Shown here in pieces: positions 5,378 to 61,528 of a DNA stretch of 64,000 bases. The notes beneath the pieces are model-generated. The model ran no database searches and was not told where the DNA came from. It saw only the letters and a program-made list of their open reading frames with translations. Location: positions 6,138,001 to 6,202,000 of the forward strand of contig NC_043026.1 in the NCBI RefSeq assembly GCF_006345805.1, written 5' to 3'. Numbering within the stretch: the first letter of the stretch is position 1; every line of letters starts with the position of its first letter. The position numbers and the translations under genes are program-made. This DNA is from Octopus sinensis (taxonomy: Eukaryota).

Positions 5378-8300
5378 TCTTTGCAGCCTTATATCGATCA
5401 TGCTGTGTCTTTACCGTGAAGCAGACCATAACGAGATGTATTTATAAATTAATACACTTGGATTTACTTAATTAATCAGTCGTTACAGAATTTGTTTGTA
5501 CATGAATCAGTCAATTATTGGTGATGTTTAATGAGAATTTCTCATGAGTGGCTGTGTGGTAAGTAGCTTGCTAACCAACCACATGGTTCCGGGTTTAGTC
5601 CCACTGCGTGGCATCTTGGGCAAGTGTCTTCTGCTATAGCCCCGGGCCGACCAATGCCTTGTGAGTGGATTTGGTAGACGGAAACTGAAAGAAGCCTGTT
5701 GTATATATGTATATATATGTGTGTGTGCGTGTATGTTTGTGTTTGTCCCCCTAGCATTGCTTGACAACCGATGCTGGTGTGTTTATGTCCCCGTCACTTA
5801 GCGGTTCGGCAAAAGATACCGATAGAATAAGTACTGGGCTTACAAAGAATAAGTCCCGGGGTCGAGTTGCTCGACTAAAGGCGGTGCTCCAGCATGGCCG
5901 CAGTCAAATGACTGAAACAAGTAAGAGAGTAAAAGAGTAAGTAATTGATAAACATACATACACATACACCCGACTGACACAAATACACACACATACACTT
6001 ATGTGCACAAATGTGTGTGTATATATATATATATACATATATTTTATTTATGCACCCTTTTCAAGCCTATCCAGGCTCACGGGCCCGGTTTCCTGGTTTC
6101 TGCGGCGTATGTGTTCCCCGCCAGATGGACGGGACGCCAGTCCATCGCAGCGTTACTCAAAAAACAGGAAGGGAGAGAGAGTGAGAGAAGGCTGGGGCGA
6201 AAGAGTACAACAGGGCTCGCCCCCAGCCCCTGCTGGAGCCTCGTGGAGCTCTCGGCGTTTTCGCTCAATAAACACACACAACGTCCGGTCTGGGAATCGA
6301 AACCGCGATCCTCTAACCGTGAGAATTATTTAAATAATGATGCGTAGATAATGGATTGAAAGTCACAAGAGAAGATAGAAAGAGAACCAGAAGAGAAGGA
6401 TTTCGGATCGAAAGGTTAATGTGGAAACTTTATTCGGTGACAATAGCTGACATGTGCTCAGTGGTGGTGGTCATATTGGTATGGATGGTGCTCAACAACA
6501 ACGGTGCTTGCATTAGACATAAACTGGGATTGGTTAGTTTTGTCTCAGACGGATGAAGATGGCCATGGAATCGGCGACTCCGTATCCTGAAAATAACAAC
6601 AAAAACAACAACATCAATAACAACCACTACTACTACTACTACTACTATAACTACTACTACTACTACTACTATTGCTGCTGCTACTACCACTACTACTACT
6701 ACTTCTACATCTACCAGGGTTAATAGAACAATAAGAGCTGAGATCGTTATGATCAGCTAAACTCTTCCAGGTGGTACTCCAGCTTGGCCACAGTTCAATG
6801 ATCTGAATCAAATGAAAGGCAAAGGTAAAGATTGCATTGAATTAATAAATAAATAATTGATCCAAGTCAATTGTTTGTCATCATTTATTTCTCCATTTTC
6901 TGTTTCTTTAAATTCTGATTCTTAAGAAATTCCTGTTGATCCTTCTCTTTACCTGTAATTTATGAAACAGAATATGCTTGCATGTGTGTGCCCAGGGTTA
7001 AACATAGCTGAATACTGGTAGTGTAATGGCTACACCTATCCCTCAGATGGTTATTTTAACCTCCAACTCAACTAACCCTATACATACATATATATATATA
7101 TATATATGATGGGCTTCTTTCAGTTTCCATCCACAAAATCCACTCACAAGGCTGTGGTTGGCCAAGGCTATAGTAGAAGACACTTGCCCAAGGTGCCTCA
7201 AGTTGAACTGAACCCAGAACCATGCGGTCGAGAAGCAAGCTTCTTACCACACAGTCACTCCTGCCACCTAAAATATTTTGGTATGGTTTCCGTGATTCTT
7301 GGAAATAATAAAAAGTGTTCTGTGGTTAAATATGTTTCTGGTAACGTTTCTCTAAGAAGGAAAGAGAGAATTATAAAGACCCCAAACAATGAGGTGATAC
7401 TTACCATCTTCCCATTTGATTTTTGAAGTTGTGTCAGAGTAAAGGATTTTAGGAAAATAGTTTGATTTCTCCCAATCACAAGTAAGGAAAGCTTCATTGA
7501 TAGTCAACCAACCAAGATCTTTTGGACAACCTTCATGCCAGTGTGAAACATAAAAACGGCGTTTGTTACTGTAAAAGAAAAAAGGGTCCACTTTCAGGTG
7601 TTGTCGCTCTTATTATTTGATATTGCTGAAGTTACAAAGCAGTCGAGATATAAAATAGCAAAGTAATAAACTCGCCCCTCGTTACTGAGAAAATTTGTCT
7701 CTTTTGTCTAGGGAGAGTCATTTTCTTTTTGTGCCTATAATGTAACAACACTCACCGGTAAAATTTCCACTTATTTCTTATTTTTTTTTCCTAAAATTTT
7801 CGTTGCGTCTTGCAACCTTTTCAATAGTCTTGACTTTCAAAAAAAGAAAATGACTCTCCCCAGACACAACAGAATATGCTTCAATACACAAACTCACATA
7901 AAGAATCTTGCAAACCAAATCCCAAAACGAAATCCTTTATGTCTTGTAACTGGAAACAAACAACTCTTGAAAGTTTTACACACGTGTGCATGCAAACTCA
8001 CAAACAAATAGATAGATAGATAGATAATTAGCCAGACAGATGGATAGATAGATATAATATATATATATATAGATAGATAGATAGCCAGACAGATAGATAG
8101 ATAGATAGATAGATAGATAACCAGACAGATGGATAGATAACCAGACAGATGGATAGATAGTTACCTAGCTAGCTAGCTAGATGGATGGATGGATAGATAT
8201 TACATAATGTAAAATGGTAAGAACTTACTCAATTCCAACGATTGAGAAACAATTTGTCGCATCTGATGCTAGATCGCTCCATGGGGAACTTTTCAGCTTT

Positions 8301-9840
8301 TCCTGAGTGAACCAGCTTTCAAGGCTTGTATTTCGCCCATCAAACACCATCGTTACCACAGCACTTTGGTTTTTGTACAACACAAGCTTCACCTGAAGAA
8401 ATGACGAGTTTCATATATATATACATCATCATCATCATCATCATCGTCGTTTAGCGTCCGTTTTCCATGCTAGCATGGGTTGGACGGTTCTACTGGGGTC
8501 TGTGAAGCCAGAAGGCTTCATCAGGCCCAGTCAAATCTGGCAGTGTTTCTACGGCTGGATGCCCTTCCTAACGCCAACCACTCCGTGAGTGTAGTGGGTG
8601 CTTTTTACGTGCCACCCGCACAGGTGCCAGACAGAGCTGGCAAAATATATATATATATATATACATCTATATATATGGAAATAATTTTATTCTCAAACGC
8701 AGTAAATTCCATTGGTTCGACCACAGTCGAACAATGACGGTGATGATTGCTGCACCTCTTATGTTTCCATAGCTTACACCTTGTACATCGTATGGAGTTT
8801 CTACCTGCACCTTTTCTACGGATTGAGGAGGGTCGTTTACCTGTCTTTGAAGTGGGTGAGGGGGTCTGCAAGAGCATTCTTCATCAATAAGACTACAGTC
8901 ACCAAGTCTAAACTTAGCAAACCACTTCCGTACAGTTCTTTCAGCTAAAGTACCTTCGCCGTACACAACACATATCTTCTTTGTTACTGGCAAGGCATTT
9001 TTTGCCTTTACGGAAATCAGAAAAAAAAGCATCAACTGTCTAAAATGCACCTAAGAATCTTCCATTTTCATAAGGATGCAAAATTGATACGATTTAAGTA
9101 ATTTTAAACTTTCTTTCTCAGTGTGAAGTATGGGCTAACTGGAAATGTTACCATATTATATATGTCAATAAATTTGATGTGTTGTAACGTGTTGGAACAT
9201 GAACGACTAAGAATGGCATGAACTTTCCAGACAATCCAATATATGTATATATATATATATGAAAGCAATGGATATAAAAATGACTGGTGTTGCGAATAAC
9301 CGCCCGACTGAATAGAAATCCCTTATACACATCACAAACAGTAATGGATTAAAATAGCTATTTATGTATCATATTGAAAACAAATACAAAAACAGGCAAA
9401 TTTAACTGTGGCATTCTTCAAGAGTATATACAGCATCAGAATAGGTGTATACATACCTCATCAATTTGAAGTTCGTTCCAGATATCAAGCAGAGGGTGTC
9501 GGAAAAAATTCGGACAATAGCTACCAACACATTTGTCCACATTCCATGTTGAAGGATGGCCTTTTTTTAATATGGAATCATAGATTAACGAGTTTGCTCC
9601 CATTGATATGGCATAGGTTTTAATCCATTCACTGCCTGAAATAACGACAACAACAACAACAATAATAACAACATCCTGAAGCAGACATTTAAGATAAAAA
9701 TGACAGAACGATCCAGGCTAATTAACATAATCATTAAAGAGATTAAAGACATAATCATTAAAGAGATTAAAGACATAATCATTAAAGAGAAAGAAGAAAA
9801 CACTTGTAGACTAATGAATGTAAATGATCCCACTGATAGA
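5378..9840. repeat. Outer inverted-repeat arm (gene A side), mirrored at about 55900-63830
   Basis: Blocks 5378-5940, 6360-8420 and 8850-9840 are near-identical reverse complements of 63245-63830, 59020-61650 and 55900-56910. Confidence 0.9.
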
Positions 9841-9845
9841 AATAG

Positions 9846-9879
<34 letters not shown>

Positions 9880-9889
9880 TAAAAATAAA

Positions 9890-9930
<41 letters not shown>

Positions 9931-10259
9931 TAAAATAAAAATAATAATAATATATATAATAAATAATAATAATAATAAAAAATATAAAATAATAATAATA
10001 AATATAATAATAATAAAAATAATATAATAATATATAATAATAATAATAATAATAAAAATATATAATAATAATGATAATAATAAAAATACAATAATAATAA
10101 TAATAAAATATAATAATAAAAATACAATAATGATAATAATAATAATAATAAAATTATTATAATAATAATAATAATAAAAATATAATAATAATAATAATGA
10201 AAATATAATAATAATAATAATAATAAAAATATATAATAATAATAATAATAATAATAAAA

Positions 10260-10300
<41 letters not shown>

Positions 10301-11136
10301 TATAGTAATAATAATAATAATAAAAATAATAATAATAATAATAAAAATATATAATAATAAAAATGATAATAATAAAAGTAATAATAATAAAAATATATAA
10401 TGATAATAATAATGATAATAAAAAAAATAATAATAATATTAATAATAAGCAAAATATAATAATAATAATGATAATAATAATAATAATAATAATAATATTT
10501 TTCCCCCATGAAAAAAACTGGTGGGAACACAAACCACCCCCAGTGCTTGAAAATGACCACATCTCACTCCTCTGGAACTTCACCATTCAAACTGACAGAA
10601 AGATAGATGCAAATAGGCCAGACATCAATTTTGAAAGACTTCAGACAAAGAACATGCCTCTTCATTGATATGACTGTCCCAATCGATATAAACGTATCTG
10701 TCAAGACCTACCAAAAACTGAGCAAATATAAAGATCTTGAAATAGAAATCAGCAAAATGTGGAAGCTGAAGACTAAAACAATACCTGTTGTCATAGGTGC
10801 CCTGGGAATGATAGCAAAAGGGGCTGATAGCTACCTAACTCAGATACCAGGAACCCAAAAATGGCAGAAATTCAAAAGATATGCTCATGGGAACTGCTCA
10901 TATCCTACCAAAATACTTTCTATGTAATCTCAAGGTTTAAACAAACATAATATTTTCGGTTTAAAAAAAAAAAAAAAAACTTTTTTTTAGACATTCATTA
11001 GTACAACACCCCCACCCCCCAAATATATGGCACACTAGGCATAACAACAACATGAACTTCCAACCTGTTGTCTCTTGAGGTATCTGGTGAGACTTGGAGC
11101 CAACTTGTACAATATAAAGCAAAGTCAAACATAGAA

Positions 11137-11178
<42 letters not shown>

Positions 11179-11701
11179 TAAAAATATAATAATAATAATA
11201 ATAATAATAAAATGATAATAAAAATAATAATAACAATATATAATAATAATAATAATAAAATAATAATAATAATAATAATAACAATAATAATAATAATAAT
11301 AATAAAAAAATATAATAATAATAATAAAATAATAATAAAAATATAATAATAATAATAATAATAATGATAAAAAATAATAATAACAATATATAATAATATA
11401 ATAAAAATAATAAAAATAATAATAATAAAATAATAATAATAAAAATATAATAATAATAATAATAATGATAATAAAAATAATAATAACAATATAATAATAA
11501 TAATAATAAAATAATAAAATATAATAATAAATAATAATAAAAAATAATAATAATAATAATAATAATGATAATAAAAATAATAATAACATATATAATAATA
11601 AAATAATCATAAATAATAATAATAATAAAATAATAATAAAAATAATATAATAATAATAATATAATGATATGAAATAAAAATAATAATAACAATATATAAT
11701 G

Positions 11702-11741
<40 letters not shown>

Positions 11742-12051
11742 TAATGCTTCACTTACTTCTATAGTAGGACATCTCGTTGTTGTCCTGTCCACTGCTGACT
11801 GTCATAATACTTTTTGGTGAGTAATTCTTACAAGTACGGTTGACTTTGTTGTAAGAAAAGAATTCCGATTGACTGTTTAGAGCGATGAGAGAACATTCCA
11901 GAAGACTTCGGCTTGGGTAGAATTTCTCTGTTGGAGGAGTTTGAAGATAAGTATAGGAGTAACCAGGACCCAAAGAGTTGTAGAAGGCTTCATCAAATTC
12001 CTGATTCGAGGAAACGGTCAGAATCGTTGCAAGGATTAGAAGCAACAGCAT
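6534..12051 (-). CDS. Paralogue A: secreted protein, signal peptide + PAN/apple-like segment + uncharacterised C-terminal domain, 284 aa, 3' type T1
   Basis: Coding exons 12051-11757 (295 nt), 9635-9457 (179), 8392-8229 (164), 7568-7405 (164), 6586-6534 (53). All introns GT-AG with matching phases 1,0,2,1. AATAAA at 6434-6429. Starts [15 protein letters not shown] and ends ...AIFIRLRQN*. Confidence 0.88.
10500..11135 (+). mobile_element. 5'-truncated restriction-like-endonuclease (R4/Dong-like) LINE inserted in (TAA)n
   Basis: Frameshifted ORF LLWNFTIQTDRKIDANRPDI...LFIDMTVP...KLSKYKDL...IPVVIGALG, flanked on both sides by (TAA)n. Confidence 0.8.
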
Positions 12052-12162: not shown

Positions 12163-12659
12163 AGAGAGTGGGAATGTAGAGAGAGGGAGAGAGAGTGAGA
12201 GAGAGAGAGAGAGAGAGTGTGAGAGAGAGTGGGAGAGAGAGAGAGAGAGAGAGAGTGTGAGAGAGAGTGGGAGAGAGAGAGAGAAAGAGGAGTTAGTAAA
12301 AGTTGTCTTATAATGTTTTTTCACGAAACACACATCTCACCTCAAAGGAATTTACATAAAACAGAGAAAAAAACAACTCCCCACCCCCCAAAAAAACAAC
12401 GACAAAAGATAAACACATAAAGTGGCATAGCTGTGTGGTTAAGAAACTCACTAAGAAACTTTGGGGTTTTGAGTTCAGTCCCACTCCACAGCACCTTGGG
12501 CAAGTATTTTGACTCTAGCTCCAGGCCGAACAATGCCTTGTGAGTGGATTAGGCACACGGAGATTGTGTGTGGAATCCCATTGAATATATAAATAATAAA
12601 AATCACAATCTTATGCCCTTGAGCGAGACCAACGTGTTACCTGCTACACCATACAACAT

Positions 12660-21830: not shown

Positions 21831-22399
21831 CATGCGTGCAGCTTGGATTTAGGATTATCGTGTATGGTGTAGCAGGTAACACGTTGGTCTCGCTCAAGGG
21901 CATAAGATTGTGATTTTTATTATTTATATATTCAATGGGATTCCACACACAATCTCCGTGTGCCTAATCCACTCACAAGGCATTGTTCGGCCTGGAGCTA
22001 GAGTCAAAATACTTGCCCAAGGTGCTGTGGAGTGGGACTGAACTCAAAGCCCCAAAGTTTCTAAGTGAGTTTCTTAACCACACAGCTATGCCACTTTATG
22101 TGTTTATCTTTTGTCATTGTTTTTTTTTGGGGGTGGAGAGTTGTTTTTTTCTCTGTTTTATGTAAATTCCTTTGAGGTGAGATGTGTGTTTCGTGAAAAA
22201 ACATTATAAGACAACTTTTACTAACTCCTCTTTCTCTCTCTCTCTCCCACTCTCTCTCACACTCTCTCTCTCTCTCTCTCTCCCTCTCTCTCTCACACTC
22301 TCTCTCTCTCTCTCTCTCTCCCACTCTCTCTCACACTCTCTCATGATCCTAAAACCAAAGTGTTCCAATTTTCTTCTCCCATTCCAGTCAAAACCAAAA

Positions 22400-23123
22400 A
22401 TGCTGATGCTTCTAATCCTTGCAACGATTCTGACCGTTTCCTCGAATCAGGAATTCGATGAAGCCTTCTACAACTCTTTGGGTCCTGGTTACTCCTATAC
22501 TTATCTCCAGACTCCTCCAACAGAGAAATTCTACCCAAGCCAAAGTCTTCTAGAATGTTCTCTCATCGCTCTAAACAGTCAATCGGAATTCTTTACTTAC
22601 AGCAAAGTCAACCGTACTTGTAAGAATTACTCACCCAAAAATATTATGACGGTCAGCAGTGGACAGGACAAGAACGAGATGTCCTACTATAGAAGTAAGT
22701 GAAGCATTATTTTTATTACAATCCTTCTTCTTCTTCTTCTTCTTATTATTATTATTAGTAGTAGTAGTAGTAGTATTCCTCCTCCTCCTCCTCCTCTTCT
22801 TCTTCTTCTTCTTCTTCTTCCTCCTCCTCCTCTTCTTCTTCTTCTTCCTCCTCCTCCTCCTCCTCTTCTTCTTCTTCTTCTTCTTCCTCCTCCTCCTCTT
22901 CTTCTTCTTCTTCTTCTTCCTCCTCCTCTTCCTTCCTCCTCCTCCTCTCCTCCTCCTCCTCCTCTTCTTCTTCTTCTTCTTCTTCTTCTTCTTCTTCTCC
23001 TCCCCCTAAGACACTAACTATTGATGGGTAAGGGTTTTGTCAGCATCAGCACTATTAGCTCTCTTGGGTATTTGCCATTGATAGGCTTTTTAGAGGTTTT
23101 GGTAGTTATCATCATCATCATCA

Positions 23124-23163
<40 letters not shown>

Positions 23164-23229
23164 CATCAAATCATCATCATCATCATTATTATTATATTAT
23201 TATTATATTTTATATCATCATTATTATTA

Positions 23230-23275
<46 letters not shown>

Positions 23276-26200
23276 AATATTATTTCAGGCATTGAATGGA
23301 TTAAAACCTATGCTGTGTCAAAGGGGGCGAACTCATTAATCTATAATTCCGTAATGAACGTAGGCGATCCTTCAACATGGAACGTGGACAAATGCGTTGG
23401 TGGCTATTGTCCGAATTTTTTCCGACACCCTCTGCTTGATATCTGGAACGAACTTCCGATTGATGAGGTATGTATACACTTATTCTGATGCTGTATATAC
23501 TCTTGAAGAATGCCACTGCTAAACTTGCCTGTTTTTGTATTTGTTTTCAATATGATACATAAATAGCTATTTTGATCCAATACTGTTTGTGATGTGTATA
23601 AGGGATTTCTATTCAGTCGGGTGGTTATTCGCAACACCAGTCATTGCTTATCCATTGTTTTCTTTTATGTCAGTGGTGACAGATCTCGTCCTAGCATGTG
23701 AATGTTTGTGAGTATAGACCATTGACAAGGTGCAATGACGTAGAAATGCCCCCAGCTTTCTCACTTGCCACTGCTGACACGATTTTCGTCTCTCTCCAAT
23801 GCATAACAGACATTTCTCCGAACAAATACCGCAGCAAATTTATCTAAGACAATATGATTCCATTAAATATGATACATAAATGGTTAAATTGTTTGTGTAG
23901 GAGTGCCTGTGTGGTAAGTAGCTTGTTTACCAACCACATGGTTCCGGGTGCAGTCCCACTGCGTGGCATCTTGGGCAAGTGGCTATAGCCTCGGGCCGAC
24001 CAAAGCCTTGTGAGTGGATTTGGTAGATGGAAACTGAAAGAAGCCCGTCATTTCTATGTATATATATATGCGTGTGTGTGTTTGTGTGTCTGTGTTTGTT
24101 CCCCTAGCATTGCTTGACAACTGATGCTGGTGTGTTTTTGCCCCCGTCACTTAGCGGTTCAGCAAAAGAGACCGATAGAATAATTACTGGGCTTACAAAA
24201 GAATAAGTCCTGGGGTCGATTTACTCGATTAAAGGCGGTGCTCCAGCATGGCCACAGTTACATGACTGAAACAAGTAAAAGAGTAAAAGAGTAAAAGAGT
24301 ATCCAAGCACCCTGGGTAACGTAGTTTCAGAATATATATGGCTATGGAAGCCTGTCTCCGAAACCCAAGGAGGGGTTCAATAACAAAGAAACAGAGAGAC
24401 AGAGGTTACAACTTTATTTGGAAAGATATATATATAGGCGCAGGAGTGGCTGTGTGGTTCCGGGTCAGTCCCACTGTCTGGCATCTTGGGCAAGTGTCTT
24501 CTGCTATAGCCTCGGGCCGACCAATGCCTTGTGAGTGGATTTCGTAGACGGAAACTGAAAGAAGCCTGTGAGATATTTGTATATATATATATGTATGTGT
24601 GTGTATGTTTGTGTGTCTGTGTTTGTCCCCTAGCATTGCTTGACAACCGATGCTGGTGTGTTTATGTCCCCGTCACTTAGCAGTTCGGCAAAAAGAGACC
24701 GATAGAATAAGTACTGGGCTTACAAAGAATAAGTCCCGGGGTCGATTTGCTCGACTAAAGGCGGTGCTCCAGCATGGCCGCAGTCAAATGACTGAAACAA
24801 GTAAAAGAGAAAAAAAAAATAAAAGAGAGACTTATCCTCTCTTCAGGTGAAACTTGTGTTATACGAAAACCAAACAGCTGTGGTAACGATGGTGTTTGAT
24901 GGACGAGATACAACCCTTGAAAGTTGGTTCTCAATTGACAAGCTGAAAAGTTCCCCATGGAGTGATCTACCAGTAGAGAACACCAATTATTTCTCCATAG
25001 CTGGATTTGGGTAAGTTTTTATTATTGGACATTAGTAAGTTTTATTTTCACTTCATTTTGCACAAACCCAGTATATATATATATATATAAAACTCAAGAC
25101 AAAGCATGTATATATAAACACACACACACACACACATATGTATATTAGGTTGGGGCATAATTATTGCGGCTTCTTTTCAACAAATTTTATTCAACAAAAA
25201 CAATAACAATATTTAACAAAAACATCTTTAAATGACGGTTTTGACCATCTGCCAAGCAAATGGGAAGCAGTAATTGAAGTAGATGGTGAATATGCTCTGG
25301 AATAATCATTTAAAGATGTTTTTCTTACATGTTGTTATTGATTTTGTTCAATATAATTTGCAGAAAAAAAGCCGCAATAATTAGGCACCAACCTAATCTT
25401 TATATATAAAAGTAAGGTTGTGTGTCTGTCTCCTACGATTTAGATTCCTAACTACTCCCACATTTTGCGGTGCAGTTTAACCAAAACCGGGTATCTTATA
25501 TTTGTGATTCATATCGAGCCCTTCTGGGTATTAGCGCGCGTCTACGATGAGTCTACGATTTTTTTCCATTTTAATGCATTTTTCGCTATTATATAAGGGA
25601 AGTAACTCTCTAAAAATGTCTACGATGAGTCAACGATTTAAAAAAAAATTTACCATCATTTTTTTCTATTTTAATGCATTTTTTCGCTATTATATAAGAG
25701 AAGTAACTCTCTAAAAATGTCTACGATGAGTCTACGATTTAAAAAAAAAATTACCATCATTTTTTTTTTTTTTAATGCATTTTTTTGCTATTATTTGGCT
25801 ATAACTCTCTAAAAATGCTTATATAGTTATTTCCCTTACAAACCCTAGCAACGCCGGGCAATACTGCTAGTATAATATAGATAAATAGATAACAGTGCCA
25901 ACAATTGAAAATGTCCTGTCTTTTCTTTGACGCCATACAGCGACGCCCGCCGTTTTTATGTGTCAAACCATCATCGGAGTTGCCCATATGACATTGGTTG
26001 GTTGTGTATTAATGAAGCTAACGAACGTTTTGAAACCTGCCCTTGGGAGACATCGAACCCTTTCCCTGCATTCCACTACTCTAAGAGTGGTTCCAAAACC
26101 ACTTGGAGCAAAGGTAAGTATTTCATTATTCGTTTTCATGTTTATAAATTTCTTTTTCGTTCCAATTGAAATTGGAATCGAAATTGAACCAATCCTATGA

Positions 26201-26926: not shown

Positions 26927-27024
<98 letters not shown>

Positions 27025-42946: not shown

Positions 42947-42981
<35 letters not shown>

Positions 42982-43328
42982 AGAAGAAGAAGAAGAAGAG
43001 AAGGAATTGCAATAAAAATAATGCTTCACTTACTTCTATAGTAGGACATCTCATTCTTGTCCTGTCCACTGCTGACCGTCATAATATTTTTGGGTGAGTA
43101 ATTCTTACAAGTACGGTTGACTTTGTTGTAAGTAAAGAATTCCGATTGACTGTTTAGAGCGATGAGAGAACATTCCAGAAGACTTCGGCTTGGGTAGAAT
43201 TTCTCTGTTGGAGGAGTCTGGAGATAAGTATAGGAGTAACCAGGACCCAAAGAGTTGTAGAAGGCTTCATCGAATTCCTGATTCGAGGAAACGGTCAGAA
43301 TCGTTGCAAGGATTAGAAGCAACAGCAT
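33839..43328 (-). CDS. Paralogue C: same secreted family, about 294 aa, 3' type T2 (3' exons duplicated across the assembly gap)
   Basis: Exons 43328-43034, 42660-42482 and 39132-38969 are intact. Exon 4 is present twice (38213-38044 and 35230-35057) with complementary single-base errors. Exon 5 is intact at 33912-33839 and damaged near 37010-36935. Merging the two copies gives an open frame. Confidence 0.75.
36706..36805. other. Assembly gap (100 N) with overlapping duplicated contig ends (33709-36705 repeats as 36806-39695)
   Basis: Run of 100 N. The flanks are direct copies with single-base indels that become more frequent toward the gap. Confidence 0.9.
41018..41560 (-). mobile_element. 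RTE-clade LINE 3' fragment in gene C intron 2
   Basis: FKATVEPILLYGSETWTL...LLMRAQNLSWKRHP, same 3' tail as 13855. Confidence 0.8.
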
Positions 43329-54035: not shown

Positions 54036-54348
54036 ATGCTGTTGCTTCTAATCCTTGCAACGATTCTGACCGTTTCCTCGAATCAGGAATTCGATGAAGC
54101 CTTCTACAAATTTTTGGGTCCTGGTTATTCCTATACTTATCTCCAGACTCCTCCAACAGAGAAATTCTACCCAAGCCGAAGTCTTCTGGAATGTTCTCTC
54201 ATCGCTCTAAACAGTCAATCGGAATTCTTTACTTACAACAAAGTCAACCGTACTTGTAAAAATTACTCACCCAAAAATATTATGACAGTCAGCAGTGGAC
54301 AGGACAAGAATGAGATGTCCTACTATAGAAGTAAGTGAAGCATTATTA

Positions 54349-54386
<38 letters not shown>

Positions 54387-54395
54387 ATTATTATA

Positions 54396-54437
<42 letters not shown>

Positions 54438-54451
54438 TTATTAATATTTTT

Positions 54452-54515
<64 letters not shown>

Positions 54516-54591
54516 ATATTATTATATTTTTATTATTAATATTATTATTATTATTATTAATATTATTATATTTTTATTATTATTATCATTA

Positions 54592-54630
<39 letters not shown>

Positions 54631-55646
54631 TTTTATTATTATTATTATTGTTTTTTTTTCCTTCTTTCAAATTTGCTTCCATTTCTTGCCGAGTGTCTTC
54701 CCGACTCCTAGGGCAAAGAAACTCATAGTATACATTGGTAGGCCATTAAACCAAACTCAATGTTCGTTTTTTTTTTTTTTTCTAAGTTAAATTAAAATAC
54801 ATGAGCAGCAACAGTTCTCACATCGACACATGCTCTTCTCAATACGTGTGATGTACCAGTTAAGACAATCTTTTGCACTTCTTGCAGGGATGGTAAGCCA
54901 GGGATCATTCTCATATAATTTTCGGTTCCCTTCTTGATCATTCCTAGTGCTCCTACAATCACTGGTATTGTAACCGCCTTGAGATGCCACATTTTCTCAA
55001 TTTCAATGAGTAGGTCTTTATATTTTCTGAGCTTGTCAAGCTCTTTCGCTGAGATATTATGATCACAGGGGATGCTCATGTCGATCAATAAGCAAACTTT
55101 ATTGTTTTGGTCTTTCACAACAATATCTGGTTTATTGGCCTTGATGGTTCGGTCTGTATGTACTGGAAAGTCCCACAGAATGGTTACATTTTCTCCTTCA
55201 GTTACAGCCTCAGGGTGGTGATTATACCACTTGTCGGCAGTTTTGATATTGTAATGCCGACTTATTATTATTATTATAATATTATTATTATTATTATTAT
55301 CATATATTTTTATTGTTATTATTATTATTATTATTATTATATATTTTTATTATTATTGTATTTTTATTATTATTATTATTATTATATTTTTATTATCTTA
55401 CAGGACACAGATAGTGTGTCTATAGCCAGCGGGAGGAGGTGTCTTCCTGGGGCTACAAACTACAGTAGCATCCACCCTTTTGGTTTAGCCATATTCAAAT
55501 GGCATATATGCATCACATTATTATTATTATTATTATTATTATATTTTTATTATTATTATTATTATTGTATTTTTATTATTATTATTATTATTATATTTTT
55601 ATTATTATTATTATTATTATTGTATTTTTTTATTATTATTATTATA

Positions 55647-55694
<48 letters not shown>

Positions 55695-55803
55695 TTTTAT
55701 TATTATTATTATTATTATTATTGTATTTTTATTATTATATTTATTATTATTATTATTATTGTATTTTTATTATTTTTATTTTTATTATTATTATTATTAT
55801 ATA

Positions 55804-55835
<32 letters not shown>

Positions 55836-58800
55836 TTAATTTTTACTATTATTTTTATTATTATTATTATTATTATTTCTATTTTCTATCAGTGGGATCA
55901 TTTACATTCATTAGTCTACAAGTATTTTCTTCTTTTTCTGTAATGATTATGTCTTTAATCTCTTTAATGATTATGTCTTTAATCTCTTTAATGATTATGT
56001 CTTTAATCTCTTTAATGATTATGTTAATTAGCCTGGATCGTTCTGTCATTTTTATCTTAAATGTCTGCTTCAGGACATTGTTATTATTGTTATTGTTGTT
56101 GTCGTTATTTCAGGTAGTGAATGGATTAAAACCTATGCCGTATCAATGGGAGCAAACTCGTTAATCTATGATTCCATATTAAAAAAAGGCCATCCTTCAT
56201 CATGGAATGTGGACAAATGCGTTGGTAGCTATTGTCCGAATTTTTTCCGACACCCTCTGCTTGATATCTGGAACGAACTTCAAATTGATGAGGTATGTAT
56301 ACACCTATTCTGATGCTGTATATACTCTTGAAGAATGCCACAGTTAAATTTGCCTGTTTTTGTATTTGTTTTCAATATGATGCATAAATAGCTCTTTTAA
56401 TCCATTACTGTTTGTGATGTGTATAAGGGATTTCTATTCAGTCGGGCGGTTATTCGCAACACCAGTCATTTTTATATCCATTGCTTTCATATATATATAT
56501 ATACATATATTGGATTGTCTGGAAAGTTCATGCCAATTCTTAGTCGTTCATGTTCCAACACGTTACAACACATCAAATTTATTGACATATATAATATGCT
56601 AACATTTCCAGTTAGCCCATACTTCACACTGTTTCTTGAGAAAGAAAGCTTAAAATGACTTAAATCGTATCAATTTTGCATCCTTATGAAAATGGAAGAT
56701 TCTTAGGTGCATTTTAGACAGTTGATGCTTTTTTTTCTTATTTCCGTAAAGGCAAAAAATGCTTTGCCAGTAACAAAGAAGATATGTGTTGTGTACGGCG
56801 AAGGTACTTTAGCTGAAAGAACTGTACGGAAGTGGTTTGCTAAGTTTAGACTTGGTGACTGTAGTCTTATTGATGAAGAATGCTCTTGCAGACCCCCTCA
56901 CCCACTTCAAAGACGACCAAATTAAGACATTGATTGAGAATAACCCGTATTGCACAACTTGGGAATTGGCAGAACCACTAAGTTTATCAAAAACCACCAT
57001 CCATGAGCACTTAGTGAAGCTTGGGGTACTCAAATCGCTACGTCTTGGTACCATATGATCTGAGGGAAAAGGATCTTTTGGATTGCATTTCCACCTTTGA
57101 TTTGCTGCATAAACGCAATGAAAATGCACCTTTTTTAAAGCAAATTGTGATTGGTGATGACAAATGGATTGTTTACAACAATGTTCAGCCGGAAAAAGAT
57201 CCTGGGGTAATATGTGTAATAATGCCCTTTATATAATATATTATATATATATATATATATATATAGTGAATTGAAGAAATGGAGTTGAACGAAGATTGAA
57301 CAGAAATCGTTTTATTGCATTCTAACGTGTTTCGAAAGTCACAATTTACCAAATTCCGATTGAATTTGGTAAATTGTGGCTTTCGAAACACGTGTAGAAT
57401 GCAATAAAACGATTTCTGTTCAATCTTCGTTCAACTCCATTTCTTCAATTCACTAATAATATTAAAATTCAATTATCCGCACCAACGCATGGTTGCAACA
57501 CCATATGGTTGTACCTCCAACCGTGCTGTCTTCTGCTGTGATTTTTGCTACCAAGGTATCGGTTAAACTTTTGATTAATCTGCAACAAGATTATTCATCT
57601 TTCTATTTCACAAAATATATATATATATCATCATCATCATCATCATCGTTTAGCGTCCGTTTTCCATGCTAGCATGGGTTGGACGGTTCTACTGGGGTCT
57701 GTGAAGCCAGAAGGCTTCATCAGGCCCAGTCAAATCTGGCAGTGTTTCTACAGCTGGATGCCTTTCCTAACGCCATATATATATATATATATATGTATGT
57801 ATAAAGTTAATCCAAACAAGAAAACACAAAAAAACACAACAACGCAAGGACGTGGAACAAATATAGTATTATTGGATGCTCAGGAAAGAAGGAAAGAAGG
57901 AGGGTTTAACGTTTCTAGAGGAGCTCTTCGTCGGAAACATAGGAGAAGGAAAGATCCAGAGAAGGGAAGACAGAGGAAAAAAAATCGCCAACGGTACACA
58001 TTAAATTCAACACGCATTGAAAGTCGACAAAGTTTTTTTTAGAAGTGTTTAGAATCAGAAATAGGAAATGGTTCAATTATACACAAACCCGTTATATAAA
58101 CTAGCTATATTATTAATATATATGTAGTATCTATAGATTTGATATTTCACACAATAATAAAGTGGAACAAAATATTAATTAATATAAAAACTAATTTACT
58201 TAAATGTAATACTACTTGATAAAAATACCACCTAATTATTAAATGATGTATAGTCTAACGAAAGTAATTCCCAAATTAAATTATATGTAAAATGTTAAAT
58301 CCCTTTATAAAAATAAATCGATATCATAATTAATAACGAGCGTAACTAATAAATATCAAGAAACTATAAATAATAATAATAATAATAATAATGATATCAG
58401 ACCCAAAACAATTCAAATTCCAAATATTACAGATAATTAATAAATCGTTACTTAGCTCATCGAAGGAAAAAATGTAATTAATTGTTTTTTTTTTTAGAAG
58501 CATTGAAACATACAGATAAGGAAATAATTTCATTCTCAAATGCAGGATAGGTGGCCACCCAACAGATTCTTCTGCAAAATATGGATAGTCTATCCTATTT
58601 GAGCTATATTATTAGCATTATCCTGCGTTTGAGAATAAAATTATTTCCATTTATATAGATGTATATGTGGAGGTGCAATGGCCCAGTGGTTAGGGCAGCG
58701 GACTCGCGGTCATAGGATCGCGGTTTTGATTCCCAGACCGGGCGTTGTGAGTGTTTATTGAGCAAAAACACCTAAAAGCTCCACGAGGCTCCGGCAGGGG

Positions 58801-58982
58801 CTGGTGATCCCTGCAGTACTCTTTCACCACTCTTTCTCCCACTCTTTCTTCTGTTGGCCTGCTCGCTTAGCCAGCGGGGTGACACCAGTCAAAGGCTAAA
58901 ACAATGCGAACGCATTGTGACCAGCGATGTGTAACTACATCTGATGGACTGGTCGGTCACGTGATCACGTGATATAGATGTA

Positions 58983-59027
<45 letters not shown>

Positions 59028-59750
59028 CTCGTCATTTCTTCAGGTGAAGCTTGTGTTGTACAAAAACCAAAGTGCTGTGGTAACGATGGTGTTTGATGGG
59101 CGAAATACAAGCCTTGAAAGCTGGTTCACTCAGGAAAAGCTGAAAAGTTCCCCATGGAGCGATCTAGCATCAGATGCGACAAATTGTTTCTCAATCGTTG
59201 GAATTGAGTAAGTTCTTACCATTTTACATTATGTAATTATCTATCCATCCATCCATCTAGCTAGCTAGCTAGGTAACTATCTATCCATCTGTCTGGTTAT
59301 CTATCTATCTATCTATCTATATATCTATCTATCTATCTATCTGTCTGGCTATCTATCTATCTATCTATCTATATATCTATCTATCTATCTATCCATCTGT
59401 CTGGATATCTATCTATCTATCCATCTGTCTATCTATCTATCTATCTATCTATCCATCTGTCTATCTATCTATCTATCTATCCATCTGTCTATCTATCTAT
59501 CTATCTATCCATCTGTCTATCTATCTATCTATCTATCCATCTGGCTATCTATCTATCTATCTATCCATCTGTCTTTTTTTTTTGTTTCTTTTGTTTTTTG
59601 TTTTTTTCATCCCCCAAAAGAAAAGCTCTACCTTGTAACTTGTCCCATCTGTGTGCAGCCCTGTGTGGCCAATAAAGAAACTTATCTATCTATCTATCCA
59701 TCTGTCTGGTTATCTAACTATCTATCCATTTGTCTGTCTATCTATCTATC

Positions 59751-59781
<31 letters not shown>

Positions 59782-61528
59782 TTGTGTGTGTGTGTGTTTG
59801 TTTGTGAGTTTGCATGCACACATGTGTAAAACTTTCAAGAGTTGTTTGTTTCCAGTTACAAGACATAAAGGATTTCGTTTTGGGATTTGGTTTGCAAGAT
59901 TCTTTATGTGAGTTCGTGTGTTGAAGCATATTCTGTTGTGTCTGGGGAGAGTCATTTTCTTTTTTTGAAAGTCAAGACTATTGAAAAGGTTGCAAGACGC
60001 AACGAAAATTTTAGGAAAATAAAAATAAGAAATAAGTGGAAATTTTACCGGTGAGTGTGTTACATTATAAGGCACAAAAAGAAAATGACTCTCCCCTAGA
60101 CAAAAGAGACAAATTTTCTCAGTAACGAGGGGCGAGTTTATTTACCTTTGCTATTTTATCTCGACTGCTTTGTAACTTCAGCAATATCAAATAATAAGAG
60201 CGACAACACCTGAAAGTGGACCCTTTTTTCTTTTACAGTAACAAACGCCGTTTTTATGTTTCACACTTGCATGAAGGTTGTCCAAAAGATCTTGGTTGGT
60301 TGACTATCAATGAAGCTTTCCTTACTTGTGATTGGGAGAACTCAAACTATTTTCCTAAAATCCTTTACTCTGACACAACTTCAAAAATCAAATGGGAAGA
60401 TGGTAAGTATCACCTCATTGTTTGGGGTCTTTATAATTCTCTCTTTCCTTCTTAGAGAAACGTTACCAAAAACATATTTAACCACAGAACACTTTTTATT
60501 ATTTCCAAGAATCACGGAAACCATACCAAAATATTTTAGGTGCAGGAGTGACTGTGTGGTAAGAAGCTTGCTTCTCGACCGCATGGTTCTGGGTTCAGTT
60601 CCACTTTGAGGCACCTTGGGCAAGTGTCTTCTACTATAGCCTTGGGCCAACCACAGCCTTGTGAGTGGATTTTGTGGATGGAAACTGAAAGAAGCCCATC
60701 ATATATATATATATATATGTATGTATAGGGTTAGTTGAGTTGGAGGTTAAAATAACCATCTGAGGGATAGGTGTAGCCATTACACTACCAGTATATCAGC
60801 TATGTTTAACCCTGGGCACACACATGCAAGCATATTATGTTCATAAATTACAGGTAAAGAGAAGGATCAACAGGAGTTTCTTAAGAATCAGAATTTAAAG
60901 GAAACAGAAAATGGAGAAATATTGATGGACAACAATTGACTTGGATCAATTATCATTTATTAATTCAATGCAATCTTTTACCTTTTGTCTTTCATTTGAT
61001 TCAGATCATTGAACTGTGGCCAAGCTGGAGTACCACCTGGAAGAGTTTAGCTGATCATAACGATCTCAGCTCTTATTGTTCTATTAACCCTGGTAGATGT
61101 AGAAGTAGTAGTAGTAGCATTAGTAGTAGTAGTTGTAGTAGTAGTAGTATTAGCAACAGCAGTAGTAGTAGTAGTAGTAGTAGTATTAGCAACAGCAGTA
61201 GTAGTAGTAGTTGTAGTAGTAGTAGCAGTGGTAGTAGTAGTTGTTGTAGTAGTAGTTGTAGTAGTAGTTGTTGTAGTAGTAGTAGTAGTTGTTGTTGTAG
61301 TAGTAGTGGTAGTAGTAGTTGTAGTAGTAGTAGTATTAGTTGTAGTAGTAGTAGTAGTAGTAGTTGTTGTAGTAGTAGTTGTAGTAGTAGTAGTAGTGGT
61401 AGTAGTAGTAGTGGTAGTAGTGGTTGTTATTGATGTTGTTGTTGTTATTTTCAGGATACGGAGTCGCCGATTCCATGGCCATCTTCATCCGTCTGAGACA
61501 AAACTTACCAATCCCAGTTTCTGTCTAA
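54036..61528 (+). CDS. Paralogue D: same secreted family, 291 aa, 3' type T1
   Basis: Coding exons 54036-54330, 56114-56292, 59044-59207, 60239-60402, 61455-61528. GT-AG, phases 1,0,2,1, open frame ending [16 protein letters not shown] at 61607-61612. Confidence 0.88.
54652..55258 (-). mobile_element. Second, divergent R4/Dong-like LINE fragment in (TAA)n
   Basis: [38 protein letters not shown]...KLRKYKDL...IPVIVGALG. Confidence 0.8.
56508..57215 (+). mobile_element. Degenerate mariner transposon, 3'-truncated; shorter mirror copy at 8850-9240(-)
   Basis: [27 protein letters not shown] (WVPHEL-like) and [17 protein letters not shown] motifs; terminus TATTGGATTGTCTGGAAAGTTC. Confidence 0.85.
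57264..57455. repeat. Near-perfect fold-back element (arms about 93 bp, 5-nt loop)
   Basis: TAGTGAATTGAAG...CAAATTC-CGATT-GAATTTG...CTTCAATTCACTA. Confidence 0.9.
58666..58968 (+). mobile_element. Second tRNA-derived SINE family with target-site duplication; related copy at about 6010-6330(-)
   Basis: Head GGTGCAATGGCCCAGTGGTTAGGGCAGCGGACTC...GATTCCC. ATATAGATGTATAT is present on both sides; the element is absent from the mirrored position in gene A. Confidence 0.8.

What the first reader, a model, noticed from the sequence alone, without database searches (positions are those of the whole stretch)
6534..61528. Four-gene cluster of an unnamed secreted protein with a near-constant N-module and two alternative C-module types
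Seen: four spliceable genes invisible in the ORF track as whole proteins. Exon 1 (signal peptide plus a two-Cys PAN/apple-like segment, [24 protein letters not shown]) differs by only a few residues among all four. Exons 3-4 fall into T1 (A,D) and T2 (B,C), with 15 of 55 differences in exon 3 and roughly 55% identity in exon 4, including a 3-aa indel. The conserved core is WIKTY...FFRHP..DIW...VKLVLY...WF....L.SSPW.DL...N.FSI.G...RRFY....CP.D.GWL....C.WE...P...YS...W...AD.MAIF. Inference: a lineage-expanded secreted recognition or effector family (lectin-like, immune, skin, mucus or salivary), with specificity carried by the variable C-module. I cannot assign a named domain or function.
Basis: partly seen in the sequence, partly recalled or inferred. 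Interest (0 to 1): 0.75.

Follow-up and report, generated by a model that had tools for sequence, protein, structure and literature searches.

The report
Octopus secreted PAN-domain gene family cluster
Four real, spliced octopus genes encode small secreted proteins (a PAN/Apple domain plus an unnamed beta-rich domain); they belong to an uncharacterised family with about 63 copies in this genome, and their "constant front, variable back" look comes from sequence exchange between neighbouring copies.

Summary
The window (Octopus sinensis, scaffold C30 6.138-6.202 Mb) holds four 5-exon GT-AG genes at the stated coordinates. They encode 284-294 aa proteins: signal-peptide-like start, reduced two-Cys PAN/Apple domain, then a ~185-aa beta-rich domain with no Pfam model. 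RefSeq annotates A and C as "uncharacterized protein".

The N gap is an unmerged contig overlap. About 3 kb is present twice, abutting both sides of the gap, and errors pile up towards it. Gene C is probably one intact T2 gene, and no exon is cut by the gap.

The cluster is a head-to-head T1/T2 pair duplicated in inverted orientation (A-D, B-C). O. vulgaris has the same pair. The four genes are an outlier of a family with 63 exon-1 copies in this genome. The same architecture occurs across molluscs, and the C-domain occurs in large extracellular proteins of amphioxus and echinoderms.

The constant N / variable C pattern is a mosaic history: synonymous divergence rises from 0.1 (exon 1) to 0.7 (exon 4), and tree topology changes along the gene. 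That indicates gene conversion of the 5' ends.

The C-domain is at best a very distant fibrinogen-related-like fold. Function (a secreted binding protein) is inferred, not shown.

The parts
6534..12051 (-). Gene A (type T1), 284 aa, = RefSeq LOC118768521. Exons 12051-11757, 9635-9457, 8392-8229, 7568-7405, 6586-6534 (stop included).
   Evidence: The spliced product is identical to P0001. A TTA-to-TAA change ends the protein 7 residues earlier than in D.
22400..27401 (+). Gene B (type T2), 294 aa. Exons 22400-22694, 23289-23467, 24847-25010, 25941-26113, 27328-27401.
   Evidence: Lies head-to-head with A; the start codons are 10.3 kb apart.
33839..43328 (-). Gene C (type T2), = RefSeq LOC118768495, which is annotated as truncated (259 aa). 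Exon 1 43328-43034, exon 2 42660-42482, exon 3 39132-38969. Proximal set: exon 4 38213-38044 (frameshifted) and exon 5 37010-36936 (frameshifted). Distal set: exon 3 36136-35979 (damaged), exon 4 35230-35057 (+1 nt, acceptor AG lost) and exon 5 33912-33839 (intact).
   Evidence: At the sites where the two exon-4 copies differ in the alignment, one copy always agrees with gene B. Taking the state shared with B gives an open 294-aa reading frame.
54036..61528 (+). Gene D (type T1), 291 aa. Exons 54036-54330, 56114-56292, 59044-59207, 60239-60402, 61455-61528.
   Evidence: Lies head-to-head with C. Orthologous to the O. vulgaris gene that encodes P0003.
33709..36705 (.). Copy 1 of the ~3 kb block that is present twice. 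It forms the end of the contig to the left of the gap.
   Evidence: Self-blastn: 34079-36705 vs 37052-39696 (93.7%, 102 gap openings) and 33709-34240 vs 36806-37363. This copy carries the odd differences in the part nearest the gap. Its last 450 bp are only 90% identical to O. vulgaris, against 98.3% for the equivalent stretch in copy 2.
36706..36805 (.). Assembly gap (100 N). It lies between the two overlapping contig ends and not inside any exon.
36806..39696 (.). Copy 2 of the duplicated ~3 kb block. It forms the start of the contig to the right of the gap.
   Evidence: This copy carries the odd differences (frameshifts in exons 4 and 5) in the part nearest the gap.
26338..26671 (+). Remnant of T1-type sequence inside intron 4 of gene B: the end of intron 2 plus the first 79 nt of exon 3, with the exon part at 26593-26671. 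It is flanked by a short direct repeat and is absent from gene C.
   Evidence: 92.5% identical to A 8643-8314. It translates to [26 protein letters not shown] followed by a stop, and it matches the O. vulgaris T1 state EGQNTNLES.
12174..12655 (.). Upstream block of gene A. It is a near-perfect inverted repeat of the upstream block of gene B (21861-22344).
   Evidence: 96.7% over 487 nt. The stretch from about -150 to -600 relative to the two start codons is 99-100% identical.
21861..22344 (.). Upstream block of gene B, the partner of the inverted repeat at 12174-12655. It is also 98.8% identical to 43877-44223 upstream of gene C.

Best explanation
**What the genes are.** They are four paralogous protein-coding genes of Octopus sinensis. 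Each encodes a ~285-294 aa protein, probably secreted, with three parts:
- a cleavable-looking signal peptide;
- a reduced PAN/Apple domain (exon 1, two cysteines);
- a ~185-residue beta-rich domain (exons 2-5) that no Pfam model covers.

**The C-domain.** It is an old extracellular module. It occurs singly behind PAN across molluscs. It also occurs in 2-4 copies in large matrix-type proteins of amphioxus, echinoderms and scallops, and in a few bacterial proteins. Its nearest solved folds are fibrinogen-related domains, but only weakly.

**The local cluster.** It is a head-to-head pair (T1 + T2) that predates the O. sinensis / O. vulgaris split. The pair was duplicated in inverted orientation, giving A(T1)-B(T2) | C(T2)-D(T1).

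**The constant N / variable C pattern.** It has a historical cause. T1 and T2 are anciently diverged in the middle of the gene (exons 3-4 and their flanks). Their 5' ends (promoter-proximal flank, exon 1, partly exon 2) and 3' ends have been homogenised by gene conversion or recombination among the four copies. The inverted orientation of partner genes probably favours this.

**Gene C.** Its doubled, damaged exons 3-5 are an assembly artefact at the gap.

**Inferred, not shown.** The proteins act extracellularly as binding (lectin- or adhesion-like) proteins. The most variable, exon-4-encoded part of the C-domain contributes to ligand choice.
For: **Gene models.**; the model of A equals a RefSeq protein.

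**PAN domain.** Foldseek probability 0.99-1.0 to HGF N domain and plasminogen PAN over ~80 columns. PAN_1 hits 14 of 55 homologues, and P0058 scores 29.4 bits against a 21.4-bit cut-off. UniProt names some relatives "Apple domain-containing".

**C-domain spread.** 798 representative clusters at E<=1e-3; the conserved core is query residues 139-282 and is repeated in multidomain proteins. No Pfam family covers it.

**Family size.** 63 exon-1 matches in the genome; the best match outside the window is 71% identical.

**Inverted duplication.**

**O. vulgaris.** It has the same T2(-)/T1(+) pair, collinear with window 37765-64000 at 94-98%.

**Mosaic history.**
- T1-T2 nucleotide identity is 96-98% in exon 1, 88-95% in exon 2, 79-82% in exon 3, 66-68% in exon 4 and 86-92% in exon 5.
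- dS over the same exons is 0.08-0.10, 0.12-0.28, 0.40-0.50, 0.67-0.72 and 0.13-0.33.
- Non-coding flanks follow the same gradient.
- Informative sites are all AD|BC in exons 3-5 (29, 52 and 19 sites). Exon 1 is star-like. In exon 2 and the start of intron 2, C groups with A/D and B is the outlier.
- The upstream blocks of A and B are 99-100% identical.
- Exon 4 of T1 and T2 are as far from each other (60%) as from a paralogue at 0.71 Mb (60-62%). Exon 1 is 95-97% between the types but 69% to that paralogue.

**Both types look functional.** None of the 38 fixed T1/T2 differences hits any of the 22 family-conserved positions.

**Gap artefact.**
Against: - No transcript or tissue evidence was reachable. 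All family members found come from genome annotation, so expression and the exact splice junctions of B, C and D rest on sequence logic and on the RefSeq model of A.
- Pfam PAN models do not hit the window's own proteins, and only two of the usual PAN cysteines are present.
- The fibrinogen-like reading of the C-domain is weak. Foldseek gives E 0.04-0.5 and TM 0.27-0.40, and a profile-profile comparison with octopus fibrinogen-related domains is negative.
- A binding function is inferred only from domain type and extracellular context.
- Gene conversion is inferred from the pattern of divergence. A single ancient cassette replacement could produce part of the same pattern.
Confidence: 0.7

Rival explanations
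1. The N-constant / C-variable pattern is produced by selection alone. Strong purifying selection acts on the N-module and diversifying selection on the C-module of recently duplicated genes, with no recombination or conversion.
For: Exon 4 is the most variable part family-wide: 35-62% identity to other paralogues, against 49-71% for exon 1. T1/T2 differences avoid conserved positions and are somewhat enriched in predicted loops, with 24 differences in 76 loop residues against 11 in 55 residues of secondary structure.
Against: - Synonymous divergence rises about 7-fold from exon 1 to exon 4.
- Intron and flank sequence around exons 3-4 is as diverged as the exons, at 65-81%.
- Omega is 0.4-0.57, not above 1.
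- The topology of informative sites changes along the gene.
- The upstream non-coding blocks of A and B are 99-100% identical.
Confidence: 0.08
2. T2 arose by cassette replacement. A T1-like gene received a foreign exon-3/exon-4 cassette in its intron 2 and then lost its own exon 3 (3' half) to exon 4. The T1 exon-3 remnant in gene B would be the footprint of that event.
For: The order in B is exon 2, T2 exon 3, T2 exon 4, T1-type intron-2 end plus the first 79 nt of T1 exon 3 (26338-26671, 92.5% to A), a piece homologous to A's intron 4 (26738-26813), then exon 5. The remnant's divergence from A equals that of the young 5' and 3' segments.
Against: - No donor exists in the genome. The best non-window match to T2 exon 4 is 60%.
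- T1 and T2 C-modules are each other's closest relatives in the tree.
- The remnant is missing from gene C and is flanked by a direct repeat, so it may be a later conversion tract copied from A into B.
- The O. vulgaris T2 gene could not be read at that position, because L013 ends before it.
Confidence: 0.25
3. Part of the four-gene picture is an assembly artefact. The A-B half and the C-D half would be two haplotypes, or a mis-joined inverted copy, of a single T1/T2 pair.
For: The assembly demonstrably contains a false duplication at the gap inside this very cluster. Only one T1-type O. vulgaris protein was found.
Against: - The arms differ by 5-10% with many structural differences: A's early stop, B's remnant and different repeat insertions.
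- The O. vulgaris locus is closer to the C-D half (94-98%) than the A-B half is to the C-D half. The two halves therefore appear to have split before the species did.
Confidence: 0.08
4. Gene C is a real pseudogene that carries a true tandem duplication of exons 3-5.
For: Both exon sets carry frameshifts or a lost acceptor in the sequence as given. RefSeq annotates a truncated 259-aa product.
Against: - The duplication boundaries coincide with the gap on both sides.
- Each copy's private changes increase towards the gap, and 43 of 57 single-base indels are homopolymer-length changes.
- At the sites where the two exon-4 copies differ in the alignment, one copy agrees with gene B.
- The left contig end is 90% identical to O. 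vulgaris, against 98.3% for the equivalent stretch on the right contig.
Confidence: 0.08

Closest known systems
PAN/Apple domain proteins (Pfam PAN_1 PF00024; HGF N domain, plasminogen and prekallikrein apple domains)
   Same: The exon-1 segment folds like the HGF N / plasminogen PAN domain in the AlphaFold model: Foldseek probability 0.99-1.0 over ~80 columns at rmsd 3.3-3.9. Homologues that align over nearly their full length pass the PAN_1 threshold at the same position.
   Different: The window's proteins themselves give no Pfam PAN hit. They keep only two cysteines (C53, C74) instead of the four to six of classical PAN/Apple domains. The partner domain is not a kringle, protease or lectin of a known type.
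Fibrinogen-related domain proteins (FReD, Pfam PF00147: ficolins, angiopoietin-like proteins, tachylectin 5A; gastropod FREPs)
   Same: - They are secreted.
- The domain size is similar once an N-terminal subdomain is counted.
- About 40 of the top 50 solved-structure matches of the C-domain model are FReDs.
- In some relatives (P0044, P0097, P0099) the domain directly follows a ~50-residue segment that matches the FReD/COLFI N-terminal subdomain significantly.
- A greedy profile alignment keeps the landmarks FS..., C..GW...C and the last strand in register.
- Like mollusc FREPs, it is a large tandem family with signs of sequence exchange.
   Different: - No Pfam Fibrinogen_C hit.
- Foldseek TM is only 0.27-0.40 and E 0.04 or worse.
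- hhalign of the domain profile against octopus FReDs is negative.
- The A-subdomain (C...CDM..GGGW) is absent and is replaced by PAN.
- The acidic calcium-site motif of FReDs is not evident.
- There is no IgSF domain as in gastropod FREPs.
- Somatic diversification was not examined.
Fibrillar collagen C-propeptide domain (COLFI, Pfam PF01410)
   Same: Three of 55 relatives give sub-threshold COLFI hits, best E 5.2e-05 and 23.1 bits. The hits fall in the segment in front of the shared C-domain, and the total unit length is similar (~230 aa).
   Different: The hits cover only COLFI profile positions ~23-82, lie below the gathering score (26.2 bits) and are absent from the octopus proteins. There is no collagen triple-helix context.
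Known octopus gene-family expansions in tandem arrays (protocadherins, C2H2 zinc fingers; named from my own knowledge of the octopus genome literature)
   Same: Dozens of lineage-specific copies lie in tandem arrays on one chromosome, with recent local duplications.
   Different: This is a different protein type: a small secreted two-domain protein. The family was not found in any paper the library search could reach.

Membership tests
PAN/Apple (Pfam PAN_1, PF00024) | Match to the Pfam PAN model above its gathering score | tested here: not met
   There is no hit on exon peptides or on the full-length P0001/P0002/P0003, even at E<=10. Among homologues, 14 of 55 hit at E<=1 (best 1e-09), and P0058 scores 29.4 bits against a 21.4-bit cut-off.
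PAN/Apple (Pfam PAN_1, PF00024) | PAN fold (a hairpin-loop alpha/beta fold as in the HGF N domain) | tested here: met
   The AlphaFold2 model has pLDDT 76-83 over residues 41-80. Foldseek probability is 0.99-1.0 to the HGF N domain and plasminogen PAN, with TM 0.50-0.57 normalised to the target (3hms, 3hmr).
PAN/Apple (Pfam PAN_1, PF00024) | Conserved cysteine core (four Cys in PAN, six in Apple) | tested here: not met
   Only C53 and C74 lie in the exon-1 segment, so this is a reduced variant.
Fibrinogen-related domain (Pfam Fibrinogen_C, PF00147) | Match to the Pfam or PDB FReD sequence profiles | tested here: not met
   There is no Pfam hit on the window proteins or on domain-only relatives. 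There is no PDB sequence hit with either the single sequence or the family profile. hhalign of the family profile against eight octopus FReDs gives probability 0.7%.
Fibrinogen-related domain (Pfam Fibrinogen_C, PF00147) | FReD fold | tested here: inconclusive
   The domain-only model has pLDDT 85. Its best PDB matches are almost all FReDs, but with E 0.04-0.5, probability at most 0.54 and TM 0.27-0.40.
Fibrinogen-related domain (Pfam Fibrinogen_C, PF00147) | N-terminal A subdomain (C...SG.Y.I.P...V.CDM..GGGW) | tested here: not met
   It is absent from the octopus proteins, where PAN precedes the domain. It is present in front of the same domain in P0044, P0097 and P0099.
Fibrinogen-related domain (Pfam Fibrinogen_C, PF00147) | Calcium site and ligand pocket of the P subdomain | not testable with these tools
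COLFI (PF01410) | Match to the Pfam COLFI model above its gathering score | tested here: not met
   The best hit is 23.1 bits against a 26.2-bit cut-off. It occurs in relatives only, and only over profile positions 23-82.
Gastropod-type FREPs (IgSF + FBG) | One or two N-terminal IgSF domains joined to a canonical FBG domain | tested here: not met
   No Ig-type or Fibrinogen_C hit appears in any Pfam scan.
The mollusc 'PAN + unnamed C-domain' family (unnamed; defined here by homology) | Full-length homology (signal peptide, PAN, C-domain; ~260-310 aa) to proteins of other molluscs | tested here: met
   phmmer hits cover residues ~45-282 of P0001 in Crassostrea, Mytilus, Aplysia, Pomacea, Littorina, Nucella, Potamilus and Argonauta proteins of 263-311 aa.

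The most novel reading that the evidence does not exclude
The C-domain would be an unrecognised third branch of the fibrinogen-related / collagen C-propeptide assemblage. Fused to a reduced PAN domain, it would have been amplified to 60+ copies in octopods as a secreted recognition repertoire. Its members would be re-assorted by exchange of N- and C-modules between copies, making it an octopus counterpart of the gastropod FREP system. Canonical FReD genes are few in this genome (11 hits).
Probability: 0.25. Interest if true: 0.7.

Novelty: new variant of a known kind. Interest (0 to 1): 0.45.

Why it matters
If the reading holds, octopods carry a large, unstudied family of small secreted two-domain proteins. 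The family's main domain is widespread in marine invertebrate extracellular proteins, yet it has no Pfam model and no solved structure.

The cluster is also a clean small example of how gene conversion between head-to-head paralogues can imitate a "constant plus variable module" design. It further shows how an unmerged contig overlap can turn an intact gene into an annotated truncated one: RefSeq LOC118768495 is given as 259 aa instead of about 294 aa.

It does not by itself open a long-standing question, because function, ligand and expression site are all unknown.

Tried and rejected
- **Pfam on exons and full-length proteins.** Single exons and the full-length proteins gave nothing. Domain-only relatives gave only noise.
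- **DUF7922.** A 32-bit DUF7922 hit in the four-repeat amphioxus protein P0005 did not recur in any other scan I ran, and no paper mentions that family. I did not use it.
- **PDB sequence searches.** The single protein and the family profile gave only a weak PAN-type hit to Toxoplasma MIC4.
- **Rfam.** No RNA family was found in the window.
- **Literature.** Searches for locus names, for "apple domain" with octopus, for PAN with gene-family expansion and for COLFI with fibrinogen gave nothing usable.
- **O. vulgaris T2 gene.** I tried to reach its 3' part to test the gap duplication and the exon-3 remnant. The locus fetched ends inside T2, and the O. vulgaris T2 protein was not found by the last homology search.
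- **T2 cassette as a recent import.** I considered that the T2 cassette came recently from another family member. I rejected this because no paralogue is closer than 60% in exon 4.
- **Mutually exclusive exons.** I considered T1/T2 as mutually exclusive alternative exons of one gene. I rejected this because each gene has only one functional exon-3/exon-4 set.
- ** 5'-flank count.** The AB|CD count for the 5' flank is partly inflated by misalignment of C and D. The statement on the A/B upstream repeat rests instead.

Full report
**1. Observation**

Reading the DNA around them gives four genes of five exons, with canonical GT-AG borders and identical intron phases (1, 0, 2, 1).

- A is on the minus strand, 12051 to 6534.
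- B is on the plus strand, 22400 to 27401.
- C is on the minus strand from 43328.
- D is on the plus strand, 54036 to 61528.

The spliced products are 284 (A), 294 (B), 291 (D) and, with the caveat in section 2, 294 aa (C).

My model of A is identical to a RefSeq protein: "uncharacterized protein LOC118768521" of Octopus sinensis (P0001). Gene C is annotated as LOC118768495, truncated at 259 aa (P0002). The window is scaffold C30:6138001-6202000 of that genome.

- Exon 1: 92-96 of 98 residues identical in every pair.
- Exon 3, T1 (A, D) vs T2 (B, C): 15 differences in 55 residues.
- Exon 4: 32 of 55 identical, with a 3-residue indel.

**2. The gap**

The two sides of 36706-36805 are not continuous.

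- Self-alignment shows that 34079-36705 matches 37052-39696 (93.7%, 102 gap openings) and that 33709-34240 matches 36806-37363. One ~3 kb block is therefore present twice, and each copy ends exactly at the gap.
- I used gene B as an outgroup in a three-way alignment. In gene direction, copy 1 carries the odd differences in the first ~1800 columns, which is its part next to the gap. Copy 2 carries them in the remainder, which is its part next to the gap.
- Of 83 indel events, 57 are single bases, and 43 of those change a homopolymer length.
- The O. vulgaris orthologue is 98.3% identical to 39247-41162 but only 90% identical to the equivalent last 450 bp of the left contig, 36253-36705.

This is what an unmerged overlap of two poorly polished contig ends looks like. 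It is not what a real tandem duplication looks like.

The consequences for gene C are these:
- The intact exon 3 lies in copy 2 and the intact exon 5 in copy 1.
- At the exon-4 sites where the two copies differ in the alignment, one copy always agrees with gene B.
- Taking the state shared with B gives an open 294-aa frame.

Gene C is therefore most likely a normal T2 gene, and its RefSeq model is truncated by the artefact. No exon is cut by the gap.

**3. Local architecture**

Inverted self-matches pair 6373-12190 with 61667-53893, and 20880-28208 with 45451-32692. The centre lies near 30.5 kb. The cluster is therefore a head-to-head T1/T2 pair present twice in inverted orientation: A(-) B(+) | C(-) D(+).

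The O. vulgaris locus of P0003 (L013) carries the same T2(-)/T1(+) head-to-head pair, with start codons 9.2 kb apart. It is collinear with window 37765-64000 at 94-98%. The pair thus predates the split of the two species.

The A-B half is more diverged from the C-D half (about 5-10%) than O. vulgaris is from the C-D half. This argues that the two halves are real paralogous copies and not haplotypes. I could not read the corresponding O. vulgaris region to confirm it.

**4. Family**

A search of the whole genome with exon 1 gives 63 matches at E<=1e-5.

| Location | Exon-1 matches |
|---|---|
| Window | 4 |
| C30, 0-0.72 Mb | about 30 |
| Unplaced scaffold C12458 | 15 |
| Small scaffolds, other parts of C30, and C4, C6, C7 | the rest |

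About seven carry stops or are truncated. The best match outside the window is 71% identical, so the four window copies form a tight outlying group.

Annotated relatives are numerous in O. sinensis, O. bimaculoides, O. vulgaris and Argonauta. All are "uncharacterized", and a few are labelled "Apple domain-containing" by UniProt.

An exhaustive HMMER search finds 798 representative clusters at E<=1e-3. Proteins of 260-310 aa with the same two-domain layout occur in gastropods and bivalves. The conserved core (residues 139-282 of A, sometimes from residue 100) also occurs 2-4 times in large proteins with other extracellular domains:
- with EGF, ZP, Sushi, C-type lectin and TSP1 domains in amphioxus, echinoderms and scallops;
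- with TIG domains in a Myxococcota protein.

**5. Domains**

*N-terminal part.* The N-terminus ([15 protein letters not shown], then NQEF) reads like a signal peptide. This is from the sequence only; no predictor was available.

*PAN domain.*
- Pfam finds nothing in the window's own proteins.
- An AlphaFold2 model built with 55 homologues has mean pLDDT 79.8. Its N-terminal part matches the HGF N domain and plasminogen PAN with Foldseek probability up to 1.0.
- PAN_1 hits 14 of 55 homologues, some above the gathering score, at the matching position.
- The PAN reading is therefore supported, as a reduced two-cysteine form.

*C-domain.*
- It has no Pfam model and no sequence relative in the PDB.
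- A domain-only model (pLDDT 85.2) finds almost only fibrinogen-related domains among its best PDB matches, but weakly: E 0.04 or worse and TM 0.27-0.40.
- In three relatives the domain follows directly on a ~50-residue segment that is significantly similar to the N-terminal subdomain of fibrinogen-related domains. In P0044, Pfam gives 6e-20 and the PDB search gives FIBCD1 at 1.4e-06. In P0097 and P0099 the similarity is sub-threshold and is to COLFI.
- The octopus "EWIKTYAISMG" aligns with the "GGGWTMVYKHSAG" strand that ends that subdomain.
- A profile-profile comparison of the domain with eight octopus fibrinogen-related domains is negative.
- A greedy alignment of the extended units keeps the landmarks in register, but at low confidence.

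I therefore call the domain [quoted passage not shown], at roughly even odds. I do not file it as a member.

**6. Why the N-module is constant and the C-module variable**

Divergence between T1 and T2 changes along the gene:

| Region | Nucleotide identity, T1 vs T2 | dS, T1 vs T2 |
|---|---|---|
| Exon 1 | 96-98% | 0.08-0.10 |
| Exon 2 | 88-95% | 0.12-0.28 |
| Exon 3 | 79-82% | 0.40-0.50 |
| Exon 4 | 66-68% | 0.67-0.72 |
| Exon 5 | 86-92% | 0.13-0.33 |

Further points:
- Omega in exons 3-4 is 0.4-0.57.
- Non-coding sequence behaves the same way. The promoter-proximal flank with exon 1, the exon-2 region and the 3' end are about 90-92% identical between A and B. The surroundings of exon 3 are 81% identical and those of exon 4 are 65%.
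- Parsimony-informative sites are exclusively AD|BC in exons 3, 4 and 5 with the 3' flank (29, 52 and 19 sites). Exon 1 is star-like. In exon 2 and the start of intron 2, C groups with A and D while B is the outlier.
- The upstream blocks of the partners A and B form a 99-100% identical inverted repeat from about -150 to -600.
- Exon 4 of T1 and of T2 are as distant from each other (60%) as each is from a paralogue at 0.71 Mb (60-62%). Exon 1 is 95-97% identical between the types but only 69% identical to that paralogue.

Distances are thus not proportional between exons, so the history is not tree-like. The simplest account is that T1 and T2 are old paralogues. Their 5' ends, and to a lesser degree their 3' ends, have been homogenised by gene conversion among the four copies.

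Trees of annotated family members suggest that N- and C-modules are also re-assorted elsewhere in the family. At the DNA level, nine exon-1 copies of 85-97% identity belong to genes with different exon-4 types. Part of the model-based signal could still come from annotation errors.

None of the 38 fixed T1/T2 amino-acid differences touches any of the 22 positions conserved in at least 80% of the family. Each type has seven cysteines, with a type-specific seventh: C206 in T1 and C235 in T2. Both types therefore look functional.

**7. Function**

Nothing was shown directly. A secreted protein built from a PAN domain and a module that is otherwise found in extracellular matrix and lectin-type architectures most likely binds an extracellular protein or glycan.

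The exon-4-encoded part is the most variable family-wide. If the fibrinogen-like register is right, it lies where the ligand pocket of fibrinogen-related domains lies. This is inference.

No expression data were reachable: all relatives found come from genome annotation, and no paper mentions these loci.

**8. Verdict**

The genes are real and annotated but uncharacterised. Four points are new:
- the artefact at the gap;
- the true family size;
- the conversion-based explanation of the modular look;
- the tentative placement of the unnamed domain.

Interest is moderate.

Noticed in passing
window 1113-1940 (+): An open reading frame of 275 aa with nine C2H2 zinc fingers (Pfam zf-C2H2 4.7e-51). 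It is probably an exon of one of the many octopus C2H2 zinc-finger genes.
   Followed up: partly
window 8670-9050 (-) and 56707-57233 (+): Remnants of a mariner/Mos1-type transposase sit at the same place in intron 2 of genes A and D (HTH_48 hit 1.9e-12). The insertion is therefore older than the A/D duplication.
   Followed up: partly
window 4285-4686, 5546-5939, 16214-16605, 23899-24291, 24455-24813, 36170-36570, 39165-39564, 41858-42250, 43512-43877, 45929-46345, 63240-63630: A ~400-bp interspersed repeat is present at least 11 times in the window in both orientations, at 83-95% identity. One copy (43512-43877) displaces the upstream block of gene C. It was not classified.
   Followed up: no
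window 26338-26671 (+): A T1-type piece (the end of intron 2 plus the first 79 nt of exon 3) lies inside intron 4 of the T2 gene B. It is flanked by a short direct repeat and is absent from gene C. Its protein reading (EGQNTNLES) matches the O. vulgaris T1 gene rather than A/D. It is either a footprint of ectopic exchange or a leftover of an older gene structure.
   Followed up: partly
window 6534-6536 (-): Gene A ends at a TAA where D has TTA (Leu), so A lacks the last seven residues (LPIPVSV) that D has. B and C have similar tails.
   Followed up: yes
window 9.7-11.7 kb, 22.7-23.3 kb, 42.7-43.0 kb, 54.3-56.0 kb; also 26.9-27.3, 34.0-34.4, 37.1-37.4, 61.0-61.4 kb: Long triplet-type microsatellite tracts fill intron 1 of all four genes, and the G+C content drops to 26% at 8-12 kb. 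A second tract lies just upstream of exon 5 in all four genes. Their lengths differ between copies.
   Followed up: no
L013 (O. vulgaris OX597841.1) 10001-22039: The O. vulgaris annotation of the T1 orthologue (P0003) adds a 5' extension. It also uses an earlier exon-1 donor, which skips about 24 residues that are kept in the O. sinensis model. This is probably an annotation difference. An ATP-synthase delta-subunit gene lies downstream.
   Followed up: no
genome G000: The genome gives only 11 matches to the canonical fibrinogen-related domain model (PF00147), against 63 exon-1 copies of the PAN + unnamed-domain family.
   Followed up: partly
G000:C30 0-0.72 Mb and scaffold C12458: Several exon hits in the main array have identical scores in pairs or triplets, for example exon 1 at 501168/715347, 324457/387575 and 285113/334948, and exon 4 at 306427/369847/415225. 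These are either very recent segmental duplications or further assembly duplicates. About 12 head-to-head pairs with start exons 5-16 kb apart can be read from the table.
   Followed up: no
window 13973-14387 vs 14243-14657: A local direct repeat with a ~270-bp offset and 95.5% identity lies in the A-B intergenic region. It was not examined.
   Followed up: no
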